Source of the DNA: Macrostomum lignano
Taxonomy: Eukaryota
Assembly: GCA_002269645.1 (NCBI GenBank)
Contig: NIVC01004397.1
Coordinates: forward strand, 1 to 47,273
DNA length: 47,273 nt
Reading direction: 5' to 3'
Made by a program: the position numbers and the translations under genes. The notes beneath the pieces are model-generated. The model did not search any database, had not been told where the DNA came from, and was given only the letters and a program-made list of their open reading frames with translations. This document shows, piece after piece, positions 708 through 42,563 of this stretch. How positions within the stretch are numbered: position 1 is the stretch's first letter; every line of letters begins with the position of its first letter.

Positions 708-3355
708 ACATAGCCAGCGTTGCACTGGCACCGATGCCCGGAGCTGGTGGACACGCAGTGCGAGTTCGGCGGGCACGTGACGTTGGCCAACACGCATTCG
801 TCGATTCGCTGGCACAGACTGTTGTCGACCATGGCCGAGCCCGGCTTGCAGGTGCAGCTGAAGCTGCCCGGCTGGTTGGTGCACACGCCGTAGTCGGGGT
901 CACCGCAAGCGTCCGGCTTGGCGCACTCGTCGATGTCGACGCACAGGAAGGGGCCGCTGGGCTGGTAGCCAGCCGAACAGGTGCAAGTGTAATTACCGGC
1001 CGTGTTGGTGCAGACTCCGTTGGGACAGGCGTTGGCGGATTTGCATTCGTCAATGTCGACGCAGTTATTATCGGAGTCGAGGATATAGCCTTTGGGACAG
1101 TAGCAGCGGTAGGAGCCCACCGTGTCGACGCACACCTGGTTAGGCGGGCATCTGCCAGGTAAAAAGGTTGGGTTGATATAGTAATAAAGCTTAGAATAAT
1201 TATACGTCAGGTGAAGGACAAACGAACGGATGTATGGATAGGACGTTAATGTACGTTAATGGACGAAAACTAATTGAGTTCGATACAAAGGTAGAGTTTT
1301 TATTAGACAAAAAGTTAAGACTAGACTATTGTGAAAGATTTTGAAGGTTGACTATTTAGGTAGACAAAAATGCAGACTGGAAGATTTAGGTAGACATAAA
1401 GGCTGTTGCATGTTTAAGAAACTTCAACTTTACCTCGCAGCTAGCCTAGCAGCGCTGGGCAGAGCGCATTCGTCGATATTGGCGCACGCGGTGTCCTTGA
1501 ACTCGTAGCCATCGGGGCAGTTGCACACGAAACTGCCGGGCGTGTTGACGCAACTGCCGCCTGGCTGACAGAAGCCCAGATTGGCTTCGGCGGCCAGTTT
1601 GCACTCGTCGACGTCTGCGCAATGATGAAGAAGATTCGATGACGACGGTGACCAGGCAGCGTTTCAACCATTGGCTCAGTGAGTTAAATTTGTGAGAAGT
1701 GCACAAAATAGAATTACCTCTAGACGGTCGGTCTCCCTTACCAACACCACCACCTGACCTTAAATTCACCTGTCTTAACTTACGGACCTGTCCTCAGCTT
1801 CACCTGTGATGTAACTTAACCTGTACATAACTGCAGCAATACTCAACCTCACTTGTACTCAACCTCACCTGTACTCAACCTCACCTGTACTCAACCTCAC
1901 TTGTGCTCAACCTCGCCTGTACTCAATCTCACCTGTACTCAACCTCACCAGTGTAGAAAAGTTAATGCCGCGTTATGGTGCTAGGCAGGCATGAAGAATA
2001 TCTCAAAGGCCGCTTGCACTTAGCAGGGCCGGCTTATATTTGGCTATGGCTAATTGCGTAATACGAGCTAAATCAATTATTGAAGTGAGTGGTTGGCTGT
2101 ACGTACTTGTACGGGGCAGTGATAGCGCTGGACCAAGTGAGCGAGGGAGAGAGAGAGGGAGGCAGATGTACACTGCTCCACAACCAGTACTCAAACTCAC
2201 CTGTACTTTAAACTCACCAGTACTAAACCTCGCCTCTCCTCAACTTCACCTATCTTTGTACTTGTCTATCTTCAACCTCACTTGTCCTCAACTCTTCACC
2301 TGCCGAATAACTCACCAACACAATCGGTGCCCTTCAGAGCGAAGCCAGCCTGACACTTGCACCGGAAACTGCCCATAGTGTTGACGCACAGCTGACCGGC
2401 ACCCGTGCAGTTGTGCAGACCCATGCTGCACTCGTCAATATCCTGGCACAGCCGTTCATTGTCAGGCGGGTTAATGTAACCCTCCGGACAGGCGCACGCG
2501 TAGCCGGTGGTGGTATTGTCAACGCACAGAGCTCCTGCTGGGCAAGCGTCGGCACGTTCCGAGCATTGGTTGATGTGCTCGCAGGCTCCTGTCAGAGACA
2601 TTTGCTGGCCTCGAGGACAGTAGCACTGGTAGCCGCCGCGGGTGTTGTTGCACAGCGCCGTGGGGTGGCAGCTGCCGTTGCGGCTACACTCGTCAACATC
2701 AACGCAGTAGACGCCGTTTACTGTGAAACCGACTGGACAGCTGCACGCGTAGCTGGCGAAGGTGTTGTGACAGGTCTGCTCGGGTCCGCACACTCCGGGA
2801 GAGGCGCATTCGTCGATGTCTGGATGACGAAATTTTAGAACAGTATATATGTGCAAGCTTTTGACGTTGTTTAGGGCGGTCAGGGTTCGAGGATGTGCCT
2901 CAGTGCTCATTGGGATCCTCTAGAGCGGTCAGCAGGGTTCGAGGATGTGCTCAGTGCTCATTGGGATCCCCTAGAGCGGTCAGCAGGGTTCGAGGATGTG
3001 CTCAGTGCTCATTGGGATCCCTAGAGCGGTCAGCAGGGTTCTAGGATGTGCTCAGTGCTCATTGGGATCCCCTAGATCGGTCAGCAGGGTTCGAGGATGT
3101 ACTCAGTGCTCAGATCCTCTAGGGCTTGGAAGCATCCTCTGCTTCATCGAGTTTATTTAGAGTTCGGAAGAGTTCTCATCAGAACCTCAACTCACCCTGG
3201 CAGTGGGTCCTGTTGAGCATCTCCAAGCCGAGTTTGCATCGGCAGGCGAAGCTGCCAACCAGGTTGACGCAGTCAGCCGTGCCTCGGTTGCAGTCGTCCG
3301 CGTTCTCGGAGCACTCGTCAATGTCTGCGTTGGGCAGAGGATTAAGGGATGAAAT

Positions 3356-3434
<79 letters not shown>

Positions 3435-3455
3435 CACAGACAGACAGACACAGAC

Positions 3456-18600: not shown

Positions 18601-19034
18601 GTTGCAGGTGCAGTTGAAGCTGCCGACCGTATTGCGACAGGTGGCGTGCGGTGAACAAGGACCGGTTTTGGTGGCGGCGCCAAGAGCACATTCGTCATCG
18701 TCTGGAAGCGGTGAGCAATTGGAATGACGAGATGATGTCCTGATTTGTCACCCAGAGTGCATCAGAGTGTTCTAGGACTTGGCTCTGGATTGTGTTGTTC
18801 TAAATTTCCGTGATTTCGATTTAGATGTAAAAGATTCTGCACTCAAAAATCACCGTCGCAGACGACTCCATTTCCGTGGAAGCCTTTCTTGCAATGACAG
18901 TCGTACATGTCATTCTCAAAGCCGCAGAAGCCATACTTGTGACAACCGTACGAAGTGCACGTGAGTGATGTTGCACCGGGCGACGTGCAGTTACACCGTT
19001 CGGTGCAGTTGGGCTTGATCATCATGTCACCGAT
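708..19034 (-). CDS. Domain block: about 53 tandem EGF/calcium-binding EGF repeats (19 exons)
   Basis: Repeated D-I/V-D/N-E-C...C-x-N-T-x-G-S/G-Y/F-x-C-x-C-x-x-G-Y/F-x-G-D/N-G-x-x-C in ORFs 704-1135, 2296-2910, 3716-4114, 5312-5707, 9800-10615, 10978-11337, 16911-17291, 17568-18056 and 18046-18468, plus short exons not in the ORF track. Many junctions are phase 1. No 8-Cys TB domains were seen. Confidence 0.95.
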
Positions 19035-31000: not shown

Positions 31001-34000
31001 CCGACAAGCTACTCATACTAAACCTCAGTCAACTCTTACAACCTACTCAAACTAAACCTCAGTCAACTCTTACAACCTACTCAAACTAAACCTCAGTTAA
31101 CTCTTACAACCTACTCATACTAAACCCCAGTCAACTCTTACAAGCTACTCAAACTAAACCCCACTCAACTCTTACAATATACTCAAACTAAGCCTCAGTC
31201 AACTCTTACAACCTACTCAAACTAAACCTCAGTCAACTCTTACAACCTACTCAAACTAAACCTCAGTTAACTCTTACAACCTACTCATACTAAACCCCAG
31301 TCAACTCTTACAAGCTACTCAAACTAAACCCCACTCAACTCTTACAATATACTCAAACTAAACCTCAGTCAACTCTTACAACCTACTCAAGCTAAACCTC
31401 AGTCAACTTTTACAACCTACTCAAACTAAACCCCAGTCAACTCTTACAACCTACTCAAACTAAACCCCAGTCAACTCTTACAAGCTACTCAAACTAAACC
31501 CCACTCAACTCTTACAATATACTCAAACTAAACCTCAGTCAACTCTTACAACCTACTCAAACTAAACCTCAGTCAACTCTTACAACCTACTCAAACTAAA
31601 CCTCAGTTAACTGTTACAACCTACTCAAACTAAACCATAGTCAACTCTTACAACCTACTCAAACTAAACCATAGTCAACTCTTACAACCTACTCAAACTA
31701 AACCTCAGTCAACCCATACAATCTACTCAAACTAAAACACACATCTACCAGACAATTTACTCAAACAATCCTACCCAGAAAACACAACAAAATAGCCCCT
31801 TAATCTATATACTCCATATAAAACAGACCCTTGCTCAAGCCAAATCCAAAAATGAACCAATAAAGCATCGCTAACCGAATTCGCACACGGCCCAAGCGTC
31901 GGACGAGCAGCCAACAACGGTGAAGCCTTCCGCCGGGTCGGCAATCTGGGTGCAGCGGCCTTGACTAGCATTGGCTGGTGCGGCGCCGCCCTTCCAGTTG
32001 TAATAAGCAATCTTGCTGCCATCAGAGTTGGTGAAGTTGGTCGCATTGGCAGCCAGAAACAGGCCAGTGTAGTAGCTCTTCGGCCCAGTCTGTCCGGCGT
32101 AGATGACACGGCTAAAAAAATTGTACTCCTCCGGAGTCTGGAAAGCCACTAGATCGCCGCCGAGGCTGCGACAGTCGTCGAGATGGTGGGTGAAATTCTG
32201 CGACGTCGAAATCACCGTGTAACACTTGCCGTTGAAATAGTAAGCGTTTCTTGGACAGCGGTAGTAAGCTGAAGTTCCGGGTTTTTAAATACGCTATTGA
32301 AGCGATAGCTTTGAGACGAGTAGTGACAGAAGAATGTAAAGTAAAACATACACACAAAAGCGTATAGAATATTAGAATAACTATATCTATTAGAACTATC
32401 TATTAAATTGGCATCTTTCACATCCTTCACTTTCGCAGCTTTCGCATCTTTCACTTTGATGCTACATCCGAATCCAGTGCGTATGAGCAAGAGAGAAAAG
32501 GGGTGGCGCCCCAGCCGATAAACAGTTGGGCTTCCCTCTTGTCCGCCTGAATTGACTACGTTACTTACTGCTCTCTCATTGGCTGGGCTAGATTGGGCCT
32601 GCCCTCTGCCCCCTAGACTGAGTTTCGTCCGTCTGACTCTGACATCTCTCCTTACTGCTCTCCTATTGGCTGAGCTAGATTAAGCCTGCCCTCTGCCCCC
32701 TAGGCTGAGTTTCGTCCGTCTGACTCTGACATCTCTCCTTACTGCTCTCTCATTGGCTGGGCTAGATTTGGCCTGCCCCTAGCCTAAAGTGAATACTTTC
32801 TGTTCATTTTTAACACCATTGGCTTCTGAGGTTAGAAATGAAAGTTTAGCTGTCACATTAAATTTAAGTGACACTGCGCAGAGAAACTACTGAAAAAGAG
32901 TAGACACTCTACTTTTACATCCTTATTTATTCGATTATCTTTTTCGTATCTAAATACGAGTATAATGTCTAATGTCTTTTCCTATGCAATGTAGACGAAT
33001 TGGGCAGAGTAGTTGAGAGGTCAGCATCTATCTGGCTTCGATTCTGTGAACAGCCACATTGATTTTGGGGCTTGTGCACGAAAATTGGTCTGGGGGTTGC
33101 CGTGCAATTCTCGCCAATGAGTAACAGCAGAGGTCCGTAGTTATAACTTCAAGTACATGTAACATTGCTTCATAAAACCAGCTATCTATATATTGTTGTT
33201 TCATATAGTCAAGAGACTCACCATATCGTTGCTTCTGACAGATGTAGCCCAGTTTGTCTCCGCAAGCTCTGGTGGCCCATCGAGCCTGCGTGCTGATAGC
33301 GGCGCAGTCTTTGCCAGCAGCCGGCTCGCCTGGACTGTCCCACATGAGGTAGGCGGGATTGTAGGCGCTGCCATCCCACCATCTGAATGCGTTCGGCGCC
33401 AGCAGGGTGTCGTACTGCAGCCCGATCCAGTGGTAGCCGGAGCCAGCGCGGGAGTTGAAGAAGCTAAAGGGTGGAGTATAATGTCGTTAATTCTTTCCCG
33501 TTGGCACCCAATTGAAATTCTAATCAAATTGTTTTCGTATTCTTTTGCAATGTGAGTAATGTTTTATTAAATCAACTTTCAATTAATATATTGATTCGCG
33601 CATCAATTTTATGGTCGACTTCTTGGCCGCATTTCTCTTTCATGCCTCGCTTACCCTACTTTATCGATTTTATGATCGGCCCTTAACAGAATTTCTCTCC
33701 TAACCTCGTTAACCCTAAGTTATCGATTTTGTAGTCTACTCTCAACTAAATTTCGCTTTTTTACAACCCAATGAATTCCTTCAATTAAACTCACTAATCA
33801 TAAAGGAATTTGCTGACATCGTTGGCCCCAATAGAGACGAGATCGGCTCCCAATAGAGCGCACTGCACCATAGCGTCCTCGTAGGTCACCGCATCGTCGC
33901 TCATATAGTAACAGTTGCCACCCAGACTCTGCCAGCCCTCCGGGCAGCTGCGAGTGGCGCCGGGAACTTTGCAGACAGTGGCCAGCTGCTCTCCGCAAGA

Positions 34001-37000
34001 CCGAGCCTCCAGTTTGACAGCTCCATTGTTGAGCACTCCACTGCCGCACATGTCTGGTCGGAATCGTCCAACTCCGGAATTGGCGGAACTATTATCCCCG
34101 GAAGTGATCCAAAGTTTTCGCCAGAGAGAGCCAACAAAATCCATTGGCGGAAAGTAGCCGCTAGTTTTGTCGTCGGCGTATCCGGTCCAGAAATTTCCGG
34201 TGGCCAGTTTAGCGTTGAGCAGGACTTTGACCTGGCTGGCTACTCGCTCGTCCAGAATAGTGACCAAAGTGCCACCGAGGGTGGCGCAATATTCGGCAGC
34301 GGATGAATGGTTGCGCTTTGTATCGTCGTAATAGTAGCAGAAGCCTTCAATACTTGTGTAGTTAGCTGGGCAGTTGGCTGTGTACAATTTTATACAGGAG
34401 GAGTGCCTTTGAGTTTCTAATATTTTTATTTACGAGCTAATAAGTAGTGACCCTGAAAAGCCATATTTTGGCACTATCGCATCCCACAATGCTGTCGTCA
34501 GATCACAAACGGTTCGTAGGTTTCTTGGATTTTAAAAGTTTGGTGCTCCACATAGGGCTCTGAGCTCCTTGAGGCTCTAATACTCTTTCGACATCCGATT
34601 TTATAAGCTTCCTGGATAGCTTTGGACCCTTGGATGCCATTGGATATCGGATATCTAACTATCACGGGCTTTCCTGAAATATCTCTTGATCCTGAACGTC
34701 CCTAGATCCTGAATTTCTCTTGATCCTGAATAACTCTAGATACCAAATCTCTCTCGATCCTAAATTTCAGTGAATCGCGCCATTTCTGATATTTAATACA
34801 TTTTAAAACATGTATGTTCTTAGATCTTAAACGCGTAAAGATCGACTAGTTGCATCGGGATGTCTCCTAAATTTGGCACTTACGCCACTTGCAGCCGGAG
34901 TGACCAGCTCCTTTGTATCCGTCGCCAATGGACCCGTGTGGACAAGCGCAGGAAATGCTGCCGTTAGCCAAATCGCTGCAAACTGACGTTGGATCGCACT
35001 GCAGCTCCTTCAGATAGGAGCAGCCGGACTCGCCAGTGCTTGCGTTGGCATAGTTTGGCGCAATAAACGGTACGGAGCAGGTTTTACCGTCGCCAACGTA
35101 GGGCGACACGCAGGCGCACTGGTAGCTTCCGGGTAGGTTGCGGCAAATTGCGTTGGCGCTGCACGGCGAGACGGTGGCCGAGCATTCGTCTACGTCGCTG
35201 CAGTTGTAGCCGTTGCCTTGGTAACCAGACTGACAGCGGCACTGATAACCGCCAGGTGTGTTGACGCACACGGCTTTGGCGTGACAGGCGTGATTGCCTC
35301 TGGCAGATGGGTTTAGGGGTTTTTCAGTTAAATTCGACTGGAAGATGAAAAATAAACAAAAGATGACAATAGCGAAATGCGATAGTAAGTAAGAAGTAGC
35401 AGTAAAATAAACTTCTGAATGTCCAGGGGGAAAATGAACACAGAATCAGGACACAAATGGAGAAGGACGTAGAGACGGACGTTGAGACGGACGTGGAGAC
35501 GGACTTAGAGACGGACGTGGAGACGGACGTGGAGACGGACTTAGAGACGGACGTGGAGACGGACGTGGAGACGGACGTGGAGACGGACGTGGAGATGGAC
35601 TTGGAGACGGACTTAGTGACGGATGTGGAGACAAAAAGACTAACGCTAAAATCCAAAAAAGGCTAACTGTAAAAATGAAAAGCCGAAAAATGATGTTGCA
35701 GAAAAAGACGAAGAAAACATTGAGCGGACAGAAATCGCATCATTGGCCTCTCACTTGGCACACTCGTCAATATCCTCGCAGGCGGGCCCGGCGAAGCCTT
35801 CGGCACAGTCGCAGAAGGCGGCGCCATCCGGCAGCTGCACGCATTTGGTGTTGTTTTTGCACGCGTTGCCAACCGAGTCAATTCCGCGAGCGCCGTTGCA
35901 CACGTGCTTCTTAGCGCAGGCCTGCGAGTACCAAACCTGGCCCTTGGCCTTGTAGAAACCGCCGGCTTCGTCTCGTTTGGCCGCTGTGCAGCCGCATTGG
36001 TTGGCTCGGACGCAGACGTTGCCGCTTCGACGGTAGCTCGGCTGGCAATGGCAGGCTGGCTGACGACGCTGCACGCCGCAGTGGGAGCCGGTGCCGATGC
36101 CCTGGTTGATGTTCGGACAGTCGTTCGGCTCGCAGGGTCGTGCGTCGACTACCAACTGTTCGTTGGCCTGACAGGTGGAAGTCTCTGAATGGAGCGGTTC
36201 GAGTCGAGTTTTGAGTCACAGCGTGCGTCATGTGTCAACACATCGACTTTAATTTTGTCATCCTGAATGTAAACACTGAATACCAAATTAGCACCCTGAT
36301 TTATTCAGGCTGGATGCCAATTAATTTGAATTCCATATTTTCTGATGCTTAAAACTCAGAAACCGATTCAAGGCTATAACCACTTTGGAAATACCTTATA
36401 AATATAAATAAACCGCTAAATAAAATCTTACAAGCCTTCTGTAACATCCAGCCGAACATATCATTAACATAATCTATTAAACGTTATAACCGCACTACTG
36501 TCTCAAGTAGAAAGTGTAACATTTATTTGCACTGCTTACCCTGGCACAGTCCGGGCGGGAACAGCTGGGCGGAGCTGAGCAGGCCGCGGGCGCTGAGCAC
36601 CTTGTAGAATGCTGTAGTCAGCTGGCACAGCTGCAGGTTGTCGAAGGGAGCGGCCATGTCGCTGTGGCAGGCGTCGTTAAAGACTCCGCGAAGCGTCGCG
36701 TCAGCCAGGTAAGTTGAGAACGCGTAGTTGGACAGAATAGCATTGCAGACGACCATCACGGAGGCTGAGGAGACGCTGCTGCTTTCGACTGGGCGGGAAA
36801 TTTCCTCCTTTTTGCAGCTGCAATTCAGGCGGGGGGATAAAGAGCTGTTGTTGTTGGTGATAATAATGTAGCTCGTAAGATGTTGGTAAATGTGAGAATT
36901 ATTGGGCGTGGTCAGGAAGGTGGCAAGGTGGGCTGTGCCCCACCCCCCAATAAAGTGAAAAATGATATTTCGCTTCTTGCAGGATCTTTAACGCCCCTGG

Positions 37001-40000
37001 TACTAGCGCCCCTGGTGCTGGCGCCCCTGGTGCTGGCGCCCCTGGTGCTGGCGCCCCTGGTGCTGGCGCCCCTGGTGCTGGCGCCCCTGGTGCTGGCGCC
37101 CCTGGTGCTGGCGCCCCTGGTGCTGGCGCCCCTGGTGCTGGCGCCCCTGGTGCTGGCGCCCCTGGTGCTGGCGCCCCTGGTGCTGGCGCCCCTGGTGCTG
37201 GCGCCCCTGGTGCTGGCGCCCCTGGTGCTGGCGCCCCTGGTGCTGGCGCCCCTGGTGCTGGCGCCCCTGGTGCTGGCGCCCCTGGTGCTGGCGCCCCTGG
37301 TGCTGGCGCCCCTGGTGCTGGCGCCCCTGGTGCTGGCGCCCCTGGTGCTGGCGCCCCTGGTGCTAAAGCCCCTGGTGCTAAAGCCCCTGGTGCTAAAGCC
37401 CCTGGTGCTGGCGCCCCTGGTGCTAAAGCCCCTGGTGCTAAAGCCCCTGGTGCTAAAGCCCCTGGTGCTGGCGCCCCTGGTGCTAAAGCCCCTGGTGCTA
37501 AAGCCCCTGGTGCTAAAGCCCCTGGTGCTAAAGCCCCTGGTGCTAAAGCCCCTGGTGCTAAAGCCCCTGTTGCTAAAGCTCCTGGTGCTAAAGCCTCTGC
37601 TGGCGCTGGCACCAACCTTTTAAATACCTCAGGCGGCAGTTGACTGACAACAAAGTATTATATAATCATGCATTAGTAAAATTTAGGTCAGAAAAAATAA
37701 GTTTATAAAACCCTTAATCACTTTTTGTAGCGTATTGACTACTACTAAAACGATTTTCTAAATACACTTAGCGTCAAGTTCAGCTTACTTGGAATTGGAC
37801 TGATTAGCAGCCATCCAGGAGGCGTACACCGCCGCCTTATCCGAGCTCGTCGTGTTGGCGCCTTTCGGCGTGAAATCGTTCGCCTGATGGCCGTCGGAGT
37901 TGCCGCAGAGGCCGCACGGTTCAATGCCGGCCAGCTGGGGGGAGATCACGGTTGCCAGGTAGCGGCGCATGTCGTAGGAGACTTCCAAGCCGTAGTCCGT
38001 AGTGATTACGATGTCGTTCCACATGTAGGTGATGGCCACAGAGCTGTTCGGATGGCCGGCCAAATTGCCAGAGTAGGTGTTGAGGCTGGGCGTGATGGGC
38101 ATTCCATTTACCTGGAATAATTAATTGTTTGTGAAGAAGGTTAGTATTTTGTCTCTAGGGCTGTTCGCCAGATTCTATCCCAAAGGCACAGAGTGAGTAC
38201 AGGCCCTACGATAAGAAATGAAGTGCCGCTGTACACCATGTGCAAGTGTATGCCTGATTTTAAGCATCCGTGTGCGCTTATGCGTCTTCAGGTGTCAGCG
38301 AAATGGGCACGTCTTGTTTCCTCCTCACTGACTGCGGGTCGACTATCAGTTGGAAAAGCTCCCCGCGAACAATCAAGCTATTTAGTTGTCAAGCAGTTAC
38401 TATGCCATTACGAAACTGTGACATCTTGTCCGGAAGCACGAGAATTTCCCGTAGGAGATTAGGCCGCAGTGCAAATCCCCCTCAATGCTTAATTAAGTCT
38501 TAATAAAGAGATTTACCTGATCAAAACTTTTTGATGGTAACTGTATATCAAATGCATACCTGTGGGTTTTGATTTTTATATAGATGCAGGGCTACATCAG
38601 TGAGCTAATAATTAATTCATATGCCATGCTGCTTTGTCCCCTAAATCTCTTATTAAAGACTTACTTAGCATTAGGGGCGGGGGTAATGCAGACAAAATCT
38701 GCCGTATGATTAAATGCACTGCAGGAGAAAAGAATTGCGGGCAAATTGCACTGCCGCAAATCTCGACGGGCAATTCGTCTGCGGGCAATTCTCATGGACT
38801 CATCTTGTCCTGTGTCCTTGCGTTGCAGCACTGGTTGCATTTTTACTACTAAGCAATAAAACACAGGTTTTGAAACGGTTCTTGATTTTGTTATTTTCAG
38901 GTGTGGAGTTCTGCATGGAATGCTAAGTGGTCTAACACCTGTAAAGAGTTGCCGTTGCACTCACTGTAACTCCGTGCTCATTGTGCGCCATGATGGTGAG
39001 GTCGTACACCCGAACAAGAACGCCGGCAACAAAGACTTTGGCACCGCCGATCAGATCTTGTTGAATATCGACGCTGAAGGCGTACTTGCTTCCAGCGGTG
39101 GCGTTGCAGTTGGCGGCCAGCTGGAAGTCGCAGCGCGAGCCGCCAACCTGATGCGCTCCGTCGAAGGTTACCACGTGGACGTTGCCGAATGCGCTGCAGG
39201 CGGCTCCGGTGCGACAGTTGAAGCCGTCGCCAAAGTAGCCGGTTTTGCACTGGCATTTGTAACTTCCGGGCGTGTTGATGCACTGGGCGTTCGGGTCGCA
39301 ATTGTGCAGCTTCAGGGCGCACTCGTCGATGTCTGGAAATGAGTCAATTACAGGATGCTCAGCTACCTTAAGACATGATCTTTTAAACAACTTTTCAGTC
39401 ACTCTGTTATCTATTTAAAGATGCCGGACCTCTATAAATGGCGAAATTGATAACTTGTTGGGCTAGTCGACTAGAAACGCCGAGACATCCAATCCGTCGA
39501 AGTAATCATCCCGTGTTTTTTAATTCAAACTCAACGCTGGTGCTTAAGTTGGTAAATAATATTTATATAATACAATCTGAGGACTTCTAAGATGTCTTCA
39601 GTTTTAAGTTATTGCATACATGCTATTATTTGACATCACTTACCAGCTGGGCAGAGGTACGACACTTCGTAGTCGCTGCAACCGGCGGCTTTGTTCTGCG
39701 ACTTGTCGCACACGATGCCCTCTCGAGAGCAGGGGGTGGAGAAGTTCTGGCCAGTGGCTGAGGCTGACAGGCCGGTGCCGGCTACTCGGCATTTCCAGTC
39801 GATTGGAGAGTTGCAGATTTCACTGCATACCTACAATGGGACGGTATGGATCAGTGTGTCTGTCCGTCTGTGCTGTGTCTGTCCGTCTGTGCTGTGTCTG
39901 TCCGTCTGTGTTAGTGTCTGTCCGTCTGTGCTGTGTCTGTCCGTCTGTGCTGTGTCTGTCCGTCTGTGTTAGTGTCTGTCCGTCTGTGTTAGTGTCTGTC

Positions 40001-42563
40001 CGTCTGTGCTGTGTCTGTCCGTCTGTGCTGTGTCTGTCCGTCTGTGTTAGTGTCTGTCCGTCTGTGTTAGTGTCTGTCCGTCTGTGCTGTGTCTGTCCGT
40101 CTGTGTTAGTGTCTGTCCGTCTGTGCTGTGTCTGTCTGTCCGTCTGTGTTAGTGTCTGTCCGTCTGTGCTGTGTCTGTCCGTCTGTGTTAGTGTCTGTCC
40201 GTCTGTGCTGTGTCTGTCTGTCCGTCTGTGCTAGTGTCTGTCCCTCTGTGTTAGTTTCTGTCCGTCTGTGCTAGTGGCTGTCCCTCAGTGTTAGTGTCTG
40301 TCCGTCTGTGCTGTGTCTGTCCGTCTGTGCTAGTTTCTGTCCGTCTGTGCTAGTGGCTGTCCCTCTGTGCTAGTGTCTGTCCGTCTGTGCTAGTGTCTGT
40401 CCGTCTGTGCTAGTGGCTGTCCCTCTGTGCTAGTGTCTGTCCCTCTGTGCTAGTTTCTGTCCGTCTGTGCTAGTGTCTGTCCCTCTGTGCTAGTGTCTGT
40501 CCCTCTGTGCTAGTGTCTGTCCGTCTGTGCTAGTGTCTGTCCGTCTGTGCTGTGTCTGTCCGTCTGTGCTAGTGTCTGTCCATCTGTGCTGTGTCTGTCC
40601 GTCTGTGCTAGTGTCTGTCCCTCTGTGCTAGTTTCTGTCCGTCTGTGCTAGTGTCTGTCCGTCCGTGTGTGCTAGTTTCTGTCCGTCCGTCTGTGCTAGT
40701 GTCTGTCCGTCCGTCTGTGTTAGTGTCTGTCCGTCTGTGTTAGTGTCTGTCCGTCTGTGCTGTGTCTGTCCGTCTGTGCTAGTGTCTGTCCCTCTGTGCT
40801 AGTGTCTGTCCGTCTGTGCTGTGTCTGTCCCTCTGTGCTAGTGTCTGTCTGTCTGTGTTAGTGTCTGTCCGTCTGTGCTAGTGTCTGTCCCTCTGTGCTA
40901 GTGGCTGTCCCTCTGTGTTAGTGTCTGTCCGTCTGTGCTAGTGGCTGTCCCTCTGTGCTAGTGTCTGTCCGTCTGTCTGTGTTAGTGTCTGTCCCTGTGC
41001 TAGTGTCTGTCCGTCTGTGCTAGTGTCTGTCCCTCTGTGCTAGTTTCTGTCCCTCTGTGCTAGTGTCTGTCCCTCTGTGCTAGTGTCTGTCCCTCTGTGC
41101 TAGTGTCTGTCCGTCTGTGCTGTGTCTGTCCCTCTGTGCTAGTGTCTGTCCCTCTGTGCTAGTGTCTGTCCGTCTGTGCTAGTGTCTGTCCGTCTGTGTT
41201 AGTGTCTGTCCGTCCGTCTGTGCTAGTGTCTGTCCGTCCATCTGTGCTAGTTTCTGTCCGTCTGTGCTAGTGTCTGTCCGTCCGTGTTAGTGTCTGTCCC
41301 TCTGTGCTGTGTCTGTCCGTCTGTGCTAGTTTCTGTCCCTCTGTGCTAGTGGCTGTCCCTCTGTGTTAGTGTCTGTCCGTCTGTGCTGTGTCTGTCCCTC
41401 TGTGCTAGTGTCTGTCCGTCTGTGCTGTGTCTGTCCCTCTGTGCTAGTGTCTGTCTGTCTGTGTTAGTGTCTGTCCGTCTGTGCTAGTGTCTGTCCCTCT
41501 GTGCTAGTGGCTGTCCCTCTGTGTTAGTGTCTGTCCGTCTGTGCTAGTGGCTGTCCCTCTGTGCTAGTGTCTGTCCGTCTGTCTGTGTTAGTGTCTGTCC
41601 CTGTGCTAGTGTCTGTCCCTCTGTGCTAGTTTCTGTCCCTCTGTGCTAGTGTCTGTCCCTCTGTGCTAGTGTCTGTCCGTCTGTGCTATTGTCTGTCCGT
41701 CTGTCTGTGTTAGTGTCTGTCCCTCTGTGCTAGTGTCTGTCCGTCTGTTTTAGTGTCTTCCGTCGTTGCTAGTGTCTGTCCGTCTGTGTTACTTTCTGTC
41801 CCTGTGCTGTGTCTGTCCCTCTGTGCTAGTTTCTGTCCGTCTGTGTTAGTGTCTGTCCCTCTGTGCTAGTGTCTGTCCGTCTGTTTTAGTGTCTTCCGTC
41901 GTTGCTAGTGTCTGTCCGTCTGTGTTACTTTCTGTCCCTGTGCTGTGTCTGTCCCTCTGTGCTAGTTTCTGTCCGTCTGTTTTAGTGTCTGTCCTTCTGT
42001 GCTAGTGTCTGTCCGTCCGTTTTAGTGTCTGTCCCTCTGTGCTAGTGTCTGTCCCTCTGTGCTAGTGTCTGTCCGTCTGTGCTAGTGTCTGTCCGTGTGT
42101 CTTAGTGTCTGTCCGTCTGTGGGAGTGCCCTTTGTCTTTATGAGTGTCCTTCGTCTTTATGAGTGTCTGTCCGTCTGTGATGGTGTCTGTCCGTCTGTGA
42201 TGGTGTCTGTCCGTCTGTGATGGTGTAGTTTCGTCTGTGCTAGTGTTTGTCCGTGTGTCTTAGTGTCTGTCCGTTTGTGTGAGAGTCCTTCGTCTGTATG
42301 AGTGGCTGTCCGTCTGTGATGGTGCCCGTCCGTCTGTGTGAGTGTCTGTCTGTCTGTTTAGTATCTGTTTCTCTGTGCCTGTCAGTTTATCCATCTGTCT
42401 ATTCCAGCGTGTCTGTCTTTAGCAGGAGATTACCAAACAACCAAAAGGCCCAAGCTTACCACTCGAGCAAAGTTGATGTTCTCATTGTCACCATCGCTTG
42501 GGTCCCTGTCCGAGTTGCAGTAGGCGGTCCATTTTGATTTTGGCGCAATCAAGTCACGCGCAC
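708..42563 (-). CDS. Giant multi-exon secreted/extracellular mosaic protein (WxxW, 2x VWD-C8-TIL, 3x CTLD, 7x Caspr-type fibrinogen-like module, about 65 EGF/cbEGF); partial at both ends; 3 frameshifts as assembled
   Basis: Exons traced 5'->3', each with AG/GT boundaries: 42563-42460, 39830-39644, 39332-38965, 38111-37789, 36817-36540, 36184-35755, 35299-34884, 34377-33795, 33463-33222, 32268-31876, 30809-30699, 30604-30482, 29669-29154, 28786-28687, 28080-27592, 26761-26317, 25848-25324, 25190-25017, 24707-24466, 24309-24075, 23790-23272, 22724-22513, 22429-21977, 21788-21358, 21258-20436, 20355-20230, 20116-19606, 19434-19220, 19034-18854, 18701-18121, 18014-17597, 17314-16925, 16329-16102, 14524-14396, 13536-13208, 12360-12083, 11782-11004, 10566-9814, 7834-7715, 7612-7414, 6720-6414, 5785-5316, 4082-3724, 3324-3196, 2819-2316, 1614-1434, 1151-708. 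Phases join at every junction except 29154/28786 (frameshift). The last EGF is incomplete at a GTAAGC donor (707), so the gene probably continues leftwards. Confidence 0.93.
1841..1951. repeat. Intronic 16-bp tandem repeat (actcaacctcacctgt), about 7 copies
   Basis: Direct reading. Confidence 0.9.
2881..3122. repeat. Intronic minisatellite, about 51-bp unit, about 4.7 copies
   Basis: cagggttcgaggatgtgctcagtgctcattgggatcccctagagcggtcag repeated. Confidence 0.95.
3356..3702. repeat. (CAGA)n microsatellite filling most of a 399-bp intron
   Basis: Direct reading. It explains the QTDR/SVCL pseudo-ORFs. Confidence 0.98.
4128..5200. repeat. Intronic minisatellite, about 27-32-bp variant units (aaatctcacaatctcattactcacacctcact)
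   Basis: Direct reading. Confidence 0.97.
5870..6330. repeat. Intronic about 26-bp repeat (gatctcatctcatctcaactcatcta) with degenerate flanks
   Basis: Direct reading. Confidence 0.92.
6796..7380. repeat. 18-bp CT-rich repeat (ctaatctactctctcccc) nested in an approximately 231-bp direct duplication
   Basis: tctactgtctctcactcc... starts at both 6796 and 7027. Confidence 0.9.
7915..9630. repeat. 41-bp minisatellite, about 41 copies; A/B alternating at the left, homogeneous to the right
   Basis: A = gaagtactcaagcctggtgaaggactaacgtgtgacattat; B = gaagtactcaagcctggtgaagtataaaactatggcattat. Confidence 0.98.
11873..12022. repeat. 21-bp tandem repeat (aacctactgattctgtagaca), about 7 copies
   Basis: Direct reading. 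Confidence 0.95.
12553..12849 (-). mobile_element. tRNA-derived SINE with conserved central domain (Meta/V/Deu-type)
   Basis: The minus strand begins GGGGTCCTAGCTAGTAGTGGTTAGAGC...GGGAGTTCGATTCTCGACC (Pol III A- and B-box, stem TTCAA/TTGAA). It continues TGTGTCCTTGAGCAAGACACTTAACTCTGCATTGCTTCAGTTCACCCGGCTGTAAAATGGG and has an AATAAAAAA tail at about 12553-12561. Confidence 0.85.
13087..13158. repeat. 72-bp exact copy of 12037-12108 (exon end plus donor) in the upstream intron
   Basis: atgaagcctacctgtctatagg...aggtccacgca is identical at a 1050-bp offset. Confidence 0.95.
13795..13942 (-). mobile_element. Short tRNA-derived SINE-like element
   Basis: Minus strand GGCCGTAGCTCAGTGATCTAGC (A-box-like) ... 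GGCTCGATTCC (B-box-like), with an A-rich AAATAAAG end. No intact cloverleaf. Confidence 0.55.
14690..16072. repeat. About 33-35-bp minisatellite with a 138-bp four-monomer higher-order period
   Basis: gggaatt(c/a)tcccacaatttaaac + tacagagagatg / catagagagacg / tatagagacg / cttagagagacg cycling. The ctacag variant recurs at 14836, 14974 and 15112. Confidence 0.97.
16445..16770. repeat. About 32-bp degenerate minisatellite (ctcagctactgagtgacggagctcccaggtgg)
   Basis: Direct reading. Confidence 0.9.
19220..20654 (-). CDS. Domain block: second VWD - C8 - TIL unit
   Basis: [27 protein letters not shown] ... [11 protein letters not shown] ... [15 protein letters not shown] (VWD); [11 protein letters not shown] ... 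SCVYDTC ... LCQ ... VC ... WRRADFC (C8); [18 protein letters not shown] ... [26 protein letters not shown] (TIL). Confidence 0.92.
21070..29380 (-). CDS. Domain block: seven tandem Caspr/CNTNAP-type fibrinogen-like cysteine-rich modules
   Basis: Each module follows P-x-T/D-C ... IDPD-x-x-G-x-L-x-P-F-x-x-x-C ... S-x-x-C-x-Q-x-x-x-Y-x-C ... W-G ... C-x-C-G ... C-N-C-D ... D-x-G ... K-x-x-LP-V/I ... L-x-C. Module starts: [56 protein letters not shown]. The family assignment comes from recalled motif similarity, not an HMM run. Confidence 0.8.
22817..23231 (+). mobile_element. 5'-truncated non-LTR retrotransposon 3' end, copy B, with 10-bp target-site duplication; LOA/R1-like C-terminal Cys/His motif
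   Basis: Encodes [45 protein letters not shown], the C-terminal zinc-knuckle pattern of LINE ORF2 proteins. Flanked by aagtacagta at 22807-22816 and 23232-23241. The clade is inferred from the motif only. Confidence 0.9.
25987..26190. repeat. 79-bp tandem repeat, about 2.6 copies
   Basis: Units start at 25987, 26066 and 26145. Confidence 0.95.
26840..27165. repeat. 11-bp tandem repeat (atcagggtatc)
   Basis: Direct reading. Confidence 0.95.
28335..28639 (+). mobile_element. Highly diverged relative of the same LINE 3' end, copy C
   Basis: Remnant [20 protein letters not shown] aligns by eye with [22 protein letters not shown]. Shares the 3' terminus cctgcagctaagtcaagt with copy B. Confidence 0.65.
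29381..30809 (-). CDS. Domain block: four EGF/cbEGF repeats
   Basis: [37 protein letters not shown]; [41 protein letters not shown]; two more at the start of exon 29669. Confidence 0.9.
31010..31735. repeat. 34-bp minisatellite (aaactaaacctcagtcaactcttacaacctactc), about 21 copies
   Basis: Direct reading. Confidence 0.97.
31876..34377 (-). CDS. Domain block: three tandem C-type lectin-like domains
   Basis: [15 protein letters not shown] ... [15 protein letters not shown] ... FWTG; [14 protein letters not shown] ... [11 protein letters not shown] ... HWIGL ... FRWWDGS ... [11 protein letters not shown]; [13 protein letters not shown] ... [19 protein letters not shown] ... WAVCE. Confidence 0.92.
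32564..32780. repeat. 87-bp tandem repeat, about 2.5 copies
   Basis: cttactgctctc... starts at 32564, 32651 and 32738. Confidence 0.92.
34884..39332 (-). CDS. Domain block: EGF - first VWD - degenerate C8 - TIL - EGFs
   Basis: [14 protein letters not shown] ... CDFQL ... [11 protein letters not shown] ... [16 protein letters not shown] (VWD); [10 protein letters not shown] ... DACHSDM ... LCQLTTAFY (C8-like, several Cys lost); [19 protein letters not shown] ... [22 protein letters not shown] (TIL); cbEGFs in 35299-34884. Confidence 0.88.
35465..35632. repeat. 12-bp tandem repeat (ggacgtggagac)
   Basis: Direct reading. It explains the ETDV/SPRP/STSV pseudo-ORFs. Confidence 0.95.
36992..37610. 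repeat. 15-bp GC-rich tandem repeat (gcgcccctggtgctg / aagcccctggtgcta), about 41 copies
   Basis: Direct reading. It lies in the intron between the VWD1 and C8 exons. Confidence 0.97.
39644..42563 (-). CDS. Domain block: WxxW (Mucin2_WxxW-like) domain split over two exons
   Basis: Joining 42563-42460 to 39830-39644 (phase 0) gives [45 protein letters not shown] ... [35 protein letters not shown]. This fits the W..D.P.g..E ... C..P..CR ... GQ ... C ... G..C ... C.DYEV.x.C pattern of mucin/CILP WxxW domains. Confidence 0.85.
39850..42420. repeat. About 18-20-bp satellite (gtgtctgtccgtctgtgcta) filling a 2.6-kb intron
   Basis: Direct reading. It runs almost from donor 42459 to acceptor 39831. 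Confidence 0.98.

What the first reader, a model, noticed from the sequence alone, without database searches (positions are those of the whole stretch)
708..42563. Giant (>5,400 aa) mosaic secreted protein combining gel-forming-mucin modules, lectins, a fibrinogen-like array and about 65 EGFs: candidate flatworm glue, mucus or matrix polymer
Seen: 47 phase-consistent exons giving WxxW-EGF-VWD-C8'-TIL-EGF-CTLDx3-EGFx4-FBGx7-EGFx3-VWD-C8-TIL-EGFx53+, with many NxS/T sequons and no PTS mucin tract, TB domain or TM helix in the window. Known: VWD-C8-TIL and WxxW are polymerisation modules of gel-forming mucins, vWF, zonadhesin and FCGBP. The published Macrostomum adhesive proteins Mlig-ap1 (CTL/vWA/EGF) and Mlig-ap2 (VWD/C8/TIL/TSP1) use these parts in separate genes. 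Inference: this architecture matches no family I recognise and unites both toolkits. It may be an undescribed structural component of mucus, adhesive footprint, rhabdite or egg-shell secretions.
Basis: partly seen in the sequence, partly recalled or inferred. Interest (0 to 1): 0.85.

Follow-up and report, generated by a model that had tools for sequence, protein, structure and literature searches.

The report
Giant secreted flatworm EGF/VWD matrix glycoprotein
The window holds most of one real, expressed Macrostomum lignano gene for a ~6,230-residue secreted glycoprotein that worms leave on surfaces; it is an enlarged member of an unnamed family shared with molluscs, and nobody has studied it.

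Summary

Corrections:
- The window is a whole 47,273-bp M. lignano scaffold, already annotated as partial PAA47595.1.
- The gene runs off both ends.
- Three 1-2-nt deletions break the frame in units 1-2; these are probably assembly errors.
- The seven "FBG" units are Caspr/CNTNAP-type fibrinogen-like domains. Their fold matches procollagen C-propeptides, not fibrinogen.
- The first "C8'-TIL" has no statistical support.

The C-terminus, taken from a near-identical copy, is Kazal-like x3, TSP1 and a VWF-like cystine knot. There is no TM helix.

Supplementary footprint mass spectrometry from Wunderer et al. 2019 lists transcript RNA1509_276 (18.7 kb, 6,230 aa) with 51 peptides. Of these, 49 map onto my model from WxxW to the cystine knot. 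So it is one gene and one protein, deposited on the substrate, and it is not Mlig-ap1.

Mollusc proteins of ~2,650 aa align collinearly over ~2,300 aa with the same seven units. The core is therefore a conserved, unnamed spiralian family. The N-terminal WxxW-VWD-lectin block and the ~53-EGF expansion are absent from those mollusc proteins.

Most likely role (inferred): a disulfide-linked, calcium-stiffened mucus or matrix polymer.

The parts
42460..42563 (-). First exon present in the scaffold (enters in phase 1). Start of the WxxW domain.
   Evidence: Peptide WTAYCNSD(K/R)[14 protein letters not shown] found in footprints. The true 5' exons (~353 aa) are not in the scaffold.
39644..39830 (-). 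Second exon. Rest of the Mucin2_WxxW domain.
   Evidence: Pfam PF13330, 46.6 bits, profile 1-88/88. Peptides [14 protein letters not shown] and [23 protein letters not shown].
37789..39332 (-). Two exons (38965-39332, 37789-38111): a calcium-binding EGF and VWD1, which carries a CGLC motif.
   Evidence: Pfam VWD 52.3 bits, EGF_3 48.9 bits. CGLC at residue 285. Peptides [26 protein letters not shown] and VFVAGVLVR.
35755..36844 (-). Two exons (36540-36844, 35755-36184): a degenerate C8-like stretch, a TIL-like cysteine pattern and one EGF.
   Evidence: Only the EGF is detected by Pfam (29 bits). C8 and TIL are not detected at E<=0.1. The same exon content appears in UniRef A0A1I8GF76 and A0A1I8J2E3.
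34884..35299 (-). Exon with three EGF domains.
   Evidence: Pfam EGF_3 89 bits, 3 stretches. Peptide [13 protein letters not shown].
31876..34377 (-). Three exons (33795-34377, 33222-33463, 31876-32268) encoding three C-type lectin domains.
   Evidence: Pfam Lectin_C 111 bits, 3 stretches. Peptides FLYDYFFNSR and IAYYNWK.
29440..30809 (-). Four EGF domains (exons 30699-30809, 30482-30604, and the 5' part of 29154-29669).
   Evidence: Peptides [10 protein letters not shown] and [13 protein letters not shown]. Aligns with the N-terminal EGFs of the mollusc orthologues.
21069..29433 (-). Array of seven ~200-aa Caspr/CNTNAP-type, COLFI-fold domains (U1-U7), spread over 13 exons.
   Evidence: The seven units are 22-26% identical to one another. 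phmmer finds 155 homologues, including CNTNAP1/2/4. The PDB profile search hits only procollagen C-propeptides. The AF2 model has pLDDT 83 and Foldseek gives TM 0.5-0.6 to 4ae2/5k31. 18 footprint peptides lie in U1-U7.
27815..29169 (-). Three frame-breaking deletions relative to the intact reading: win ~29169 (1 nt, T run), ~28011 (2 nt), ~27815 (1 nt).
   Evidence: The NCBI model PAA47595.1 starts just downstream. A sister scaffold has a different indel.
20667..21050 (-). Three calcium-binding EGF domains between the unit array and VWD2.
   Evidence: Peptides [12 protein letters not shown] and [25 protein letters not shown].
18960..20660 (-). VWD2-C8-TIL(-TILa) cassette with a CGLC motif. Includes the 126-nt exon 20230-20355.
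   Evidence: Pfam VWD 98.5, C8 30.1, TIL 42.3, TILa 19.6 bits. Peptides [19 protein letters not shown] and [27 protein letters not shown].
708..18959 (-). Array of ~53 EGF or calcium-binding EGF domains across 19 exons.
   Evidence: 100% tblastn match to PAA47595.1. 15 footprint peptides.
2..23 (-). Partial last exon in the scaffold (ANEYGQC). It completes the EGF begun at win 708.
   Evidence: The GTAAGC donor at win 707 overlaps an in-frame TAA. PAA47595.1 ends here; PAA83517.1 continues for 409 aa.

Best explanation
The window is a complete 47.3-kb scaffold of the Macrostomum lignano genome. It carries the middle ~88% of a single gene (transcript RNA1509_276 = RNA815_32; NCBI partial model PAA47595.1). 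The product is a ~6,230-aa, ~672-kDa, acidic, cysteine-rich secreted glycoprotein.

Shown:
- The exon structure and the domain order.
- It is one transcript and one protein, and that protein is present on surfaces where worms have attached.
- The core (EGF, seven Caspr-type COLFI-fold domains, EGF, VWD-C8-TIL, EGF, Kazal-like x3, TSP1, C-terminal cystine knot) is orthologous, unit for unit, to ~2,650-aa uncharacterised mollusc proteins.
- The mollusc proteins checked lack the flatworm's N-terminal WxxW-EGF-VWD-EGF-CTLDx3 block and carry far fewer EGFs than its ~53 after the second VWD cassette.

Inferred mechanism:
- The cystine knot makes disulfide-bonded tail-to-tail dimers in the ER, as in VWF and gel-forming mucins.
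- The two CGLC-bearing VWD modules and the WxxW domain give further head-end disulfide or non-covalent association, so the protein forms long filaments or networks.
- The calcium-binding EGF runs form stiff, calcium-dependent rods.
- The three C-type lectin domains, and perhaps the unit array, tie the polymer to glycans of mucus, glycocalyx or other secreted giants.

Its most likely role is as a structural or cohesive component of epidermal or pedal-type mucus, or of surface-associated matrix, rather than of the duo-gland glue itself.

The three frameshifts in this scaffold are most likely consensus errors of the long-read assembly.
For: - Source and identity: PAA47595.1 sits on a contig of exactly 47,273 bp and maps at ~100% identity.
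- Gene model.
- Pfam support.
- One gene: UniRef A0A1I8J2E3 bridges TIL1 to unit 5. There is no start exon or AATAAA in the CTLD3-EGF intron. Dataset S2 of PMC6410801 lists RNA1509_276_1 as '5UTR_CDS_3UTR', 6,230 aa, with 51 unique peptides; 49 of them map from WxxW to the cystine knot.
- C-terminus: EGF, Kazal-like, TSP1 (47.8 bits) and a cystine knot. The AF2 model of the knot has pLDDT 84, and its best PDB matches are the VWF CK domain 4nt5/9qrv (TM 0.63-0.67).
- Unit fold.
- Mollusc collinearity and unit-by-unit correspondence.
- A limpet pedal-mucus protein, P-vulgata_2 (2,500 aa; vWFD, EGF x11, Kazal x2, TSP1), fits this family's architecture (PMC7333891).
- Assembly-error reading: a sister scaffold's model shows an indel at a different site, while the transcript ORF is intact.
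Against: - No expression pattern, knock-down or multimer analysis exists for this protein.
- The footprint sample also contains vitellogenins, so it is not pure secretion, and the protein could be carry-over from tissue or eggs.
- Polymerisation is by analogy only. The protein has two widely separated VWD modules, not the D1-D2-D'D3 set of mucins and VWF. The first lacks a detectable C8/TIL. Pfam Cys_knot scores only 14.7 bits, and the last cysteine of the PROSITE CTCK pattern (pattern recalled from my own knowledge) is missing.
- The cystine knot and the first ~353 aa are not in this window.
- The sequence of P-vulgata_2 could not be obtained, so its orthology is unverified.
- The frameshifts could be real in this copy.
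Confidence: 0.65

Rival explanations
1. The protein is an internal extracellular-matrix or microfibril component, with a fibrillin-like role in basement membrane or parenchymal matrix. On this view its presence in the footprint sample is contamination.
For: - 45 calcium-binding EGF consensus prefixes and a best human hit to fibrillin-2. UniRef names one copy 'Fibrillin-2'.
- The footprint sheet is topped by vitellogenins, which shows non-glue material in the sample.
Against: - No TB/8-Cys domains: there is no CCC motif.
- The WxxW, CTLD, VWD and cystine-knot modules are typical of secreted mucus or gel proteins.
- It ranks 5th by score in the footprint sheet, with 51 peptides.
- A limpet protein of matching architecture is found in pedal mucus.
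Confidence: 0.22
2. It is a dedicated third component of the duo-gland adhesive, made in adhesive gland cells of the tail plate and required for attachment.
For: - It was detected in footprints.
- Its module set (CTL, VWD-C8-TIL, EGF run) is the same as the core of the cohesive proteins Mlig-ap1, Mile-ap1 and Tmed-ap1.
Against: - The paper that produced the footprint data names only Mlig-ap1 and Mlig-ap2 as the adhesive proteins and never mentions this transcript.
- Orthologues occur in molluscs. That these animals lack duo-gland organs is from my own knowledge.
- There are no Lys/Arg-rich regions; the protein is acidic, pI 5.9.
Confidence: 0.08
3. The copy on this scaffold is a decaying allele or paralogue (pseudogene), with functional copies elsewhere (Mlig025420 loci).
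For: - Three frame-breaking deletions lie within 1.4 kb.
- There is one R/K difference from the peptide and transcript sequence.
- M. lignano carries several near-identical copies of this gene.
Against: - All other exons are intact over 16.4 kb, with canonical splice sites and no other stops.
- All three defects are short deletions, one of them in a T run. That this is typical of long-read consensus errors is from my own knowledge.
- The sister scaffold shows a different indel.
Confidence: 0.25
4. The locus is two or more adjacent genes: an N-terminal WxxW/VWD/lectin gene and a downstream orthologue of the mollusc protein. The long transcript would then be a mis-assembly.
For: - Mollusc orthologues start with a signal peptide just before the EGFs that correspond to residue ~1114.
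- The CTLD3 exon would hit a stop two codons past its donor if left unspliced.
- NCBI models are fragmentary.
Against: - The EGF exon after CTLD3 has no ATG and needs an upstream phase-1 exon. The intervening intron has no candidate start exon and no AATAAA.
- A0A1I8J2E3 bridges the junction.
- A single 18.7-kb transcript with one 6,230-aa ORF carries peptides from both halves.
Confidence: 0.04

Closest known systems
Uncharacterised mollusc proteins of ~2,650 aa (Lottia gigantea V4AG22/LOTGIDRAFT_230443, Pecten maximus XP_033732371, Mercenaria XP_053408175, Dreissena XP_052258852). Probably also the limpet pedal-mucus protein P-vulgata_2.
   Same: A single collinear alignment of ~2,300 aa at 29-30% identity covers EGFs, seven Caspr-type units, EGFs, VWD-C8-TIL and EGFs (tested on the Lottia, Pecten and Mercenaria proteins and on a fourth ~2,600-aa protein, P0006, known only from public read assemblies, taxon unknown). 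The Dreissena protein carries the same seven units. The units correspond position by position: a perfect 1-7 diagonal against P0006. The C-terminal Kazal-like/TSP1/cystine-knot end is the same.
   Different: The mollusc proteins start with a signal peptide directly before the EGFs. They have one VWD, no WxxW and no C-type lectin domains (Pfam run on the Lottia, Pecten and Lymnaea proteins), and only about 6-11 EGFs after the TIL. The flatworm protein is 2.3 times longer. None of them has a studied function, and the sequence of P-vulgata_2 was not available to confirm orthology.
Fibrinogen-like domain of Caspr/CNTNAP/neurexin-IV
   Same: The seven units are sequence-homologous to the domain at ~580-790 of CNTNAP1/2/4 and neurexin-IV. 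They share the motif C.CG..G.C...(n)CNCD...(n)D.G....K..LPV.
   Different: CNTNAPs have one such domain, set among discoidin, laminin-G and EGF domains, and a TM anchor (from my own knowledge of CNTNAP2). Here seven are in tandem in a secreted protein with no laminin-G or discoidin domains.
Fibrillar procollagen C-propeptide (COLFI, PF01410; PDB 4ae2, 5k31)
   Same: These are the only solved structures hit by the unit profile (E 1e-4). They are also the top 17 Foldseek matches to the unit model, over the whole domain (E 1e-8 to 4e-6, TM 0.5-0.6).
   Different: Pfam COLFI scores only 15 bits against a cut-off of 26.2. There is no collagen triple helix upstream. Trimerisation and chain-selection features were not tested.
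Gel-forming mucins and von Willebrand factor
   Same: Shared modules: a WxxW (CysD-type) domain, VWD-C8-TIL with a CGLC motif, and a C-terminal cystine knot structurally closest to the VWF CK domain.
   Different: No PTS mucin tract. Only two VWD modules, ~2,700 aa apart, rather than D1-D2-D'D3. The first has no detectable C8 or TIL. There are no VWA or VWC domains. The bulk of the protein is EGF.
Flatworm cohesive adhesive proteins Mlig-ap1, Mile-ap1 and Tmed-ap1
   Same: They use the same module vocabulary in the same relative order: CTL, (EGF), VWD-C8-TIL, then a calcium-binding EGF run. Mlig-ap1 is from the same species and was found in the same footprint data set.
   Different: Mlig-ap1 is 5,407 aa on scaf1170, with >3,600 aa of Lys/Arg-rich flanks (pI >14), one CTL and 17 EGFs. 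None of the ap1 domain lists I read includes a unit array. This protein is acidic, has no KR regions, three CTLs, two VWDs, seven units and ~65 EGFs. No direct sequence comparison could be run.
Fibrillins and fibulins
   Same: Long tandem arrays of calcium-binding EGF domains. The best human BLAST hit in the authors' annotation is FBN2.
   Different: No TB/8-Cys or hybrid domains. The VWD, lectin, Caspr-type, Kazal and cystine-knot modules are foreign to fibrillins.

Membership tests
Spiralian 'seven-unit VWD' family (Lottia V4AG22 and relatives; unnamed) | Seven tandem Caspr-type units, positionally equivalent between species | tested here: met
   An HMM built from the flatworm units finds exactly 7 domains in the Lottia, Pecten, Mercenaria, Dreissena and Babylonia proteins, and in P0006, a protein known only from public read assemblies (taxon unknown). 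The best-match matrix is diagonal: 1-7 against P0006, 6 of 7 against Lottia and Mercenaria.
Spiralian 'seven-unit VWD' family (Lottia V4AG22 and relatives; unnamed) | Collinear flanks: EGFs upstream; EGF, VWD-C8-TIL, EGF_CA, Kazal-like/TSP1 and cystine knot downstream | tested here: met
   One BLASTP HSP of ~2,350 aa at 29-30% identity to residues 1114-3389. Pfam on mollusc proteins. The C-terminal cysteine pattern aligns.
Gel-forming mucin / VWF polymer family | N-terminal D1-D2-D'D3 set of VWD-C8-TIL assemblies | tested here: not met
   Only two VWD modules, ~2,700 aa apart. The first lacks a detectable C8 or TIL. About 353 N-terminal residues remain unseen.
Gel-forming mucin / VWF polymer family | Central Pro/Thr/Ser-rich O-glycosylated mucin domain | tested here: not met
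   Maximum P+T+S is 30% in any 100-aa window.
Gel-forming mucin / VWF polymer family | C-terminal cystine-knot (CTCK) dimerisation domain | tested here: met
   Taken from the near-identical copy PAA83517.1, outside the window. AF2 pLDDT 84; Foldseek best hits are the VWF CK domain 9qrv/4nt5, TM 0.63-0.67. Pfam Cys_knot gives only 14.7 bits. Dimerisation itself was not tested.
Fibrinogen-related domain (Pfam PF00147 Fibrinogen_C) | Match to the Fibrinogen_C profile and the full A/B/P-subdomain fold | tested here: not met
   No Fibrinogen_C hit at E<=0.1 for any unit. Foldseek aligns only 119 columns to fibrinogen gamma C, TM 0.27, E 2e-3.
Fibrillar collagen C-propeptide (COLFI, PF01410) | Match to the COLFI profile and fold; position C-terminal to a collagen triple helix | tested here: inconclusive
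   The fold and the PDB profile search match. But Pfam gives 15.1 bits against a cut-off of 26.2, and no collagen repeats precede any unit (direct reading of the translated sequence).
Caspr/CNTNAP proteins | Discoidin plus four laminin-G domains plus a TM anchor around a single fibrinogen-like domain | tested here: not met
   Only the fibrinogen-like domain is shared. Pfam finds no F5/8C or laminin-G domains in the pieces scanned. No TM helix.
Fibrillin/LTBP | TB (8-Cys, CCC-containing) domains interspersed among calcium-binding EGFs | tested here: not met
   No CCC anywhere in the 5,877 aa reconstructed.
Mlig-ap1 (published M. lignano adhesive protein 1) | 5,407 aa; Lys/Arg-rich regions A-C (>3,600 aa, pI >14); one CTL; 17 EGFs; scaf1170 | tested here: not met
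   Description in PMC6410801 against this protein's composition: K+R 9%, D+E 11%, pI 5.9. Direct sequence comparison was not possible.

The most novel reading that the evidence does not exclude
The seven-unit array of Caspr-type, procollagen-C-propeptide-fold domains may be an ancient self-assembly or substrate-binding platform dating from before the flatworm-mollusc split. It would define a conserved spiralian family of surface-mucus or adhesive-trail polymers. The flatworm 'cohesive' glue proteins (the ap1 family) would then be derived from this family by loss of the array and gain of Lys/Arg-rich flanks. On this reading the gene is the long-postulated 'mucus protein ancestor' type of temporary adhesives.
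Probability: 0.2. Interest if true: 0.7.

Novelty: new variant of a known kind. Interest (0 to 1): 0.45.

Why it matters
[quoted passage not shown] This ~672-kDa protein is the fifth-ranked entry in the same published footprint data set, yet it has never been discussed.

It has clear orthologues in molluscs, and one limpet pedal-mucus protein has a matching architecture. If it is a mucus or cohesive polymer, it links flatworm and mollusc surface secretions through a shared, very old gene family. It would also give a testable candidate for the 'mucus ancestor' of the flatworm glue proteins.

A fixed array of seven Caspr-type domains with a procollagen C-propeptide fold is an undescribed protein architecture whose function is open.

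Practically, the locus shows how the current M. lignano assembly and annotation fragment giant genes. Causes seen here are scaffold ends, frame-breaking indels, and introns that are 43% minisatellite and read as long false ORFs.

Tried and rejected
- Plus-strand reading: only Arg/Cys-rich junk frames and translated tandem repeats.
- First gene model (81 exons, 6,350 aa): it absorbed tandem-repeat ORFs ('GASTR', 'STSVS') and tiny spurious exons, so I replaced it.
- Word-indexed protein searches: the VWD2 cassette gave 3 distant hits. The unit profile gave none. Neither returned the M. lignano models, which came only from the exhaustive HMMER search.
- Exact-ORF look-up of a window ORF in public assemblies: nothing.
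- Literature searches for the locus tags (Mlig002622, Mlig025420) and transcript names (RNA815_32 and others) in main texts: nothing.
- Search for a paper linking the CNTNAP fibrinogen-like domain to procollagen: nothing.
- Search for a signal-peptide exon in win 42564-47273: only weak or unsupported candidates. These were MQFVCVCFSMLCLVF... at win 43769-43892, and an intron read-through MVLC... used by UniRef A0A1I8GF76. The two unmapped peptides show that the real 5' exons lie off the scaffold.
- Obtaining the P-vulgata_2 sequence from the limpet paper's supplement: not present.
- The repeat finder only re-listed the tandem arrays.
- Pfam on the first C8'/TIL and on the Kazal-like block of the flatworm protein: nothing significant.
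Full report
**What is in the window.** The coding signal is on the minus strand. The plus strand yields only Arg/Cys-rich junk and translated repeats, while the minus strand gives 49 EGF-pattern matches in long stop-free segments.

A first splice-aware dynamic-programming model over-predicted (81 exons), because intronic tandem repeats read as long ORFs. With repeats masked and stricter penalties it gave 47 exons and 5,423 aa.

I then threaded the database proteins through the DNA. This gave 48 exons, all GT-AG: 47 between win 42563 and win 708, plus a partial exon at win 2-23. They encode 5,468 aa.

Half of the introns are phase 1 (24 of 47). Intron length runs from 80 to 2,629 nt (median 399). 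Tandem minisatellites make up 43% of intron sequence, and none lies in an exon.

**Source and existing annotation.** An exhaustive HMMER search with one repeat unit returned two M. lignano proteins. One is PAA47595.1, 'hypothetical protein BOX15_Mlig002622g2, partial', 3,912 aa. It lies on a contig of exactly 47,273 bp, the length of the window, and maps to the window at ~100% identity.

The window is thus an entire scaffold of the M. lignano assembly. Near-identical copies on other scaffolds are PAA83517.1 (4,265 aa) and PAA72493.1 (2,844 aa, which UniRef names 'Fibrillin-2').

UniRef A0A1I8J2E3 (1,615 aa) spans the first TIL-like region through unit 5, joining the N-terminal block to the unit array. 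UniRef A0A1I8GF76 (409 aa) covers WxxW to the C8-like stretch.

**The gene runs off both ends.**
- 3' end: the last full exon ends ...CQCNAGYV, where an in-frame TAA overlaps a GTAAGC donor. Splicing to win 23..2 (ANEYGQC) completes the EGF. This is how PAA47595.1 ends.
- Downstream sequence: PAA83517.1 continues for 409 aa. That stretch holds one more calcium-binding EGF, three Kazal/follistatin-like modules (Kazal_2 at 20.7 bits in the flatworm; 41.7 bits with three stretches in the Lymnaea relative), a TSP1 repeat (47.8 bits) and a C-terminal cystine knot, then a stop. There is no TM helix.
- Cystine knot: Pfam scores it only 14.7 bits. An AlphaFold model built on eight orthologous C-termini has pLDDT 84. 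Its best PDB matches are the VWF CK domain (9qrv, 4nt5; TM 0.63-0.67, 24-25% identity), followed by norrin, sclerostin and VEGF.
- 5' end: the first exon in the window enters in phase 1 and has no ATG. The 4.7 kb upstream holds only weak signal-peptide candidates.

**Three frameshifts.** Compared with A0A1I8J2E3, the window lacks:
- 1 nt in a T run at win ~29169 (NSAF|CIQTIR),
- 2 nt at ~28011 (GDTT|RSTSS),
- 1 nt at ~27815 (IDP|DQRGE).

All three lie in units 1-2. The frame-restored reading is the one that fits the conserved unit motifs. The NCBI model begins just downstream of the last defect, which explains why it is 'partial'.

The sister model PAA83517.1 begins with an out-of-frame reading of win ~26615 joined to the true frame. 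That scaffold therefore carries its own indel at a different site. The transcript ORF is intact. I read the indels as consensus errors (about 0.7) rather than decay of this copy. Only raw reads can settle it.

**Domain order** (curated residue numbers, starting at the first residue in the window):

| Residues | Module | Support |
|---|---|---|
| 1-100 | WxxW | PF13330, 46.6 bits, full length |
| 101-136 | calcium-binding EGF | |
| from 137 | VWD1 with CGLC | 52 bits |
| to ~569 | C8-like stretch with few cysteines; TIL-like cysteine pattern; one EGF | only the EGF reaches E<=0.1 |
| 570-708 | EGF x3 | |
| 709-1120 | C-type lectin x3 | 111 bits |
| 1121-1271 | EGF x4 | |
| 1274-2706 | seven ~200-aa units | see below |
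| 2713-2840 | calcium-binding EGF x3 | |
| 2843-3226 | VWD2-C8-TIL-TILa | 98.5 / 30.1 / 42.3 / 19.6 bits, with CGLC |
| 3227-5468 | ~53 EGF | |
| beyond the window | EGF, Kazal-like x3, TSP1, cystine knot | |

Overall there are about 65 EGFs, 45 of them with the D/N-x-D/N-E/Q-C prefix. Cys is 10.3%, and the window part has 61 sequons. There is no PTS tract, no CCC/TB motif and no TM-grade hydrophobic segment.

**What the seven 'FBG' units are.** The units are 22-26% identical to one another, and nine columns are invariant across all seven, six of them cysteines.

- Pfam gives no Fibrinogen_C hit, and only a sub-threshold COLFI hit on unit 1 (15.1 bits).
- phmmer with unit 3 finds 155 proteins at E<=1e-3. 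Among them are CNTNAP1, CNTNAP2, CNTNAP4 and neurexin-IV, hit at their ~580-790 'fibrinogen-like' domain. There are also many small uncharacterised proteins of echinoderms, hemichordates, priapulids and molluscs.
- A profile of the seven units searched against all PDB sequences hits only fibrillar procollagen C-propeptides (5k31 at E 1e-4; 4ae2).
- An AlphaFold model of unit 3, built on a 32-sequence alignment, has pLDDT 83 and pTM 0.80.
- In Foldseek, the top 17 PDB matches are all procollagen I/III C-propeptides over the whole domain (E 1e-8 to 4e-6, TM 0.5-0.6). Fibrinogen gamma C follows with only 119 aligned columns (TM 0.27, E 2e-3).

So 'FBG' is right only in the Caspr sense. These are Caspr-type domains with a COLFI fold, and the full fibrinogen fold is not matched.

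**One gene, one protein, found on the substrate.** This is not Mlig-ap1, which has 5,407 aa, >3,600 aa of Lys/Arg-rich flanks, one CTL, 17 EGFs, and lies on scaf1170 (PMC6410801).

The supplementary footprint mass-spectrometry table of that paper (Dataset S2, sheet footprints_Trypsin_intact_1) lists transcript RNA1509_276_1 (= RNA815_32 = RNA1310_12):
- 18,692 nt, typed '5UTR_CDS_3UTR';
- protein of 6,230 aa, 671.8 kDa, pI 5.9;
- best Pfam hit EGF_CA, best human hit FBN2;
- 51 unique peptides, score 185, fifth in the sheet after two vitellogenins and two VWA/zonadhesin-like giants.

I mapped the 51 peptides onto my reconstruction: 48 match exactly and one has an R/K difference. They fall in WxxW, VWD1, the EGFs, the CTLDs, every one of units 1-7, VWD2, the EGF array and the cystine knot.

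The two peptides that do not map (TDGSVYVKDDFSR and YQCIQSCYDK) are not encoded in any frame of the window. The transcript's ORF is also 353 aa longer than my 5,877. Together these place the missing N-terminal exons beyond the scaffold end.

Further support for a single gene comes from the CTLD3-EGF junction. The intron has no start-exon candidate and no AATAAA, and the next exon has no ATG. This disposes of the multi-gene reading and shows that the protein is made and left on surfaces. The paper's text never mentions it.

**A conserved family.** Mollusc proteins of ~2,600-2,660 aa contain exactly seven of these units at residues ~230-1650. This holds for Lottia V4AG22 ('VWFD domain-containing'), Pecten, Mercenaria, Dreissena and Babylonia, and for P0006, a protein known only from public read assemblies whose taxon is unknown.

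Pfam on the Lottia, Pecten and Lymnaea proteins shows EGFs before the units. After them come EGF, one VWD, TIL, EGF_CA and (in Lymnaea) Kazal x3. There is no WxxW, no lectin and no second VWD.

BLASTP gives a single collinear HSP of ~2,350 aa at 29-30% identity between these proteins and residues ~1114-3389 of the flatworm protein. Their C-termini show the same Kazal-like/TSP1/cystine-knot end. Mercenaria starts with a clear signal peptide directly before the EGFs.

The unit-versus-unit score matrix is diagonal: a perfect 1-7 against P0006, and 6 of 7 against Lottia and Mercenaria. The array of seven was therefore already fixed before flatworms and molluscs diverged.

The mollusc proteins examined lack the N-terminal ~1,100 aa (WxxW-EGF-VWD-EGFs-CTLDx3) and carry only about 6-11 EGFs where the flatworm has ~53. 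No EGF exons cross-match at the DNA level, so the expansion is old.

**Link to mucus.** The limpet pedal-mucus proteome describes P-vulgata_2: 2,500 aa, complete, with a signal peptide, 7.8% Cys, vWFD, EGF x11, Kazal x2 and TSP1 x1. It was found in all mucus types and is BLAST-similar to the flatworm glue protein Mile-ap1 (PMC7333891).

Its length and detected domains fit the mollusc family. About 1,400 aa have no listed domain, which fits my finding that Pfam does not recognise these units. I could not obtain its sequence, so this is a lead and not a test.

The flatworm ap1 core order, as published, is the order found here once the unit array is removed: CTL, (EGF), VWD-C8-TIL, then an EGF run. 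That is compatible with common ancestry but remains untested.

**How it most likely works.**

Shown: a secreted-type, acidic, heavily disulfide-bonded, N-glycosylatable giant. It has calcium-binding EGF rods, three lectin domains, two CGLC-bearing VWD modules, a WxxW domain and a VWF-like cystine knot. It is deposited on the substrate.

Inferred, from the established behaviour of VWF and gel-forming mucins:
- tail-to-tail disulfide dimers through the cystine knot;
- further head-end association through VWD and WxxW, giving filaments or networks;
- calcium-dependent stiffening of the EGF runs, as in fibrillin;
- glycan cross-linking through the CTLDs.

The role of the seven-unit array is unknown. 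Its fold relatives trimerise procollagen chains or act as spacer or adhesion modules in Caspr.

I put 0.65 on 'polymeric mucus or surface-matrix structural glycoprotein'. The rivals are internal matrix (0.22) and duo-gland glue component (0.08). Separately, there is a 0.25 chance that this particular scaffold copy is defective.

**Novelty.** The gene is in GenBank and UniProt as hypothetical fragments, and in a supplementary table. It has no name, no complete model in those databases and no functional study.

In kind, it belongs to the VWD/cystine-knot/EGF secreted-polymer world. The conserved array of seven Caspr-type domains, and its combination with a mucin-like head and lectins, is an undescribed variant of that kind.

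Noticed in passing
window introns, e.g. 7892-9649, 39856-42368, 14680-16086, 4128-5268, 31004-31736, 36992-37589: 43% of intron sequence (11,182 of 26,160 nt) is tandem minisatellite with periods of 15-60 nt and up to 125 copies. None lies in an exon. The 15-nt array at 36992-37589 reads as a 235-aa 'GASTR' ORF on the minus strand and an 'RPWCW' ORF on the plus strand, and it fooled a naive gene model.
   Followed up: partly
window 278-682 and 22822-23234: A dispersed ~420-nt repeat, 79.5% identical and in the same orientation, sits in two different introns of the gene. It is possibly a transposable-element fragment. It is the only non-tandem repeat of >=120 nt within the scaffold.
   Followed up: no
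window 707-708 (minus strand): The last full exon ends GT|GTAAGC. Unspliced, this reads GTG TAA, an in-frame stop that would give a false C-terminus inside an unfinished EGF. The donor reading is the correct one.
   Followed up: yes
window ~26599-26615 (minus strand): The sister-scaffold model PAA83517.1 starts '[20 protein letters not shown]'. This is an out-of-frame translation of this stretch fused to the true frame. That scaffold therefore has an indel here which the window lacks, so different assembly copies carry different frame errors.
   Followed up: partly
window 42564-47273: The 4.7 kb upstream of the first exon has no convincing coding exon. The best signal-peptide-like candidate is MQFVCVCFSMLCLVFCTVC... 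at 43769-43892, with a GTGAGC phase-1 donor, and it is unsupported. UniRef A0A1I8GF76 instead reads through the intron just upstream of win 42563.
   Followed up: partly
window 3356-3703 versus 39856-42368: The (ACAG)n-like array near the 3' part of the gene is ~70% complementary to the 20-nt array in the second intron (repeat finder inverted pairs I1-I9). This is probably simple-sequence similarity and not a structure.
   Followed up: no
PMC6410801 Dataset S2 (not in the window): The same footprint sheet holds other undiscussed giants ranked above this protein: a 6,570-aa and a 5,237-aa VWA/zonadhesin-like protein, and a 1,602-aa WSC-domain protein just below it. Some may be Mlig-ap2 fragments. 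I did not resolve them.
   Followed up: no
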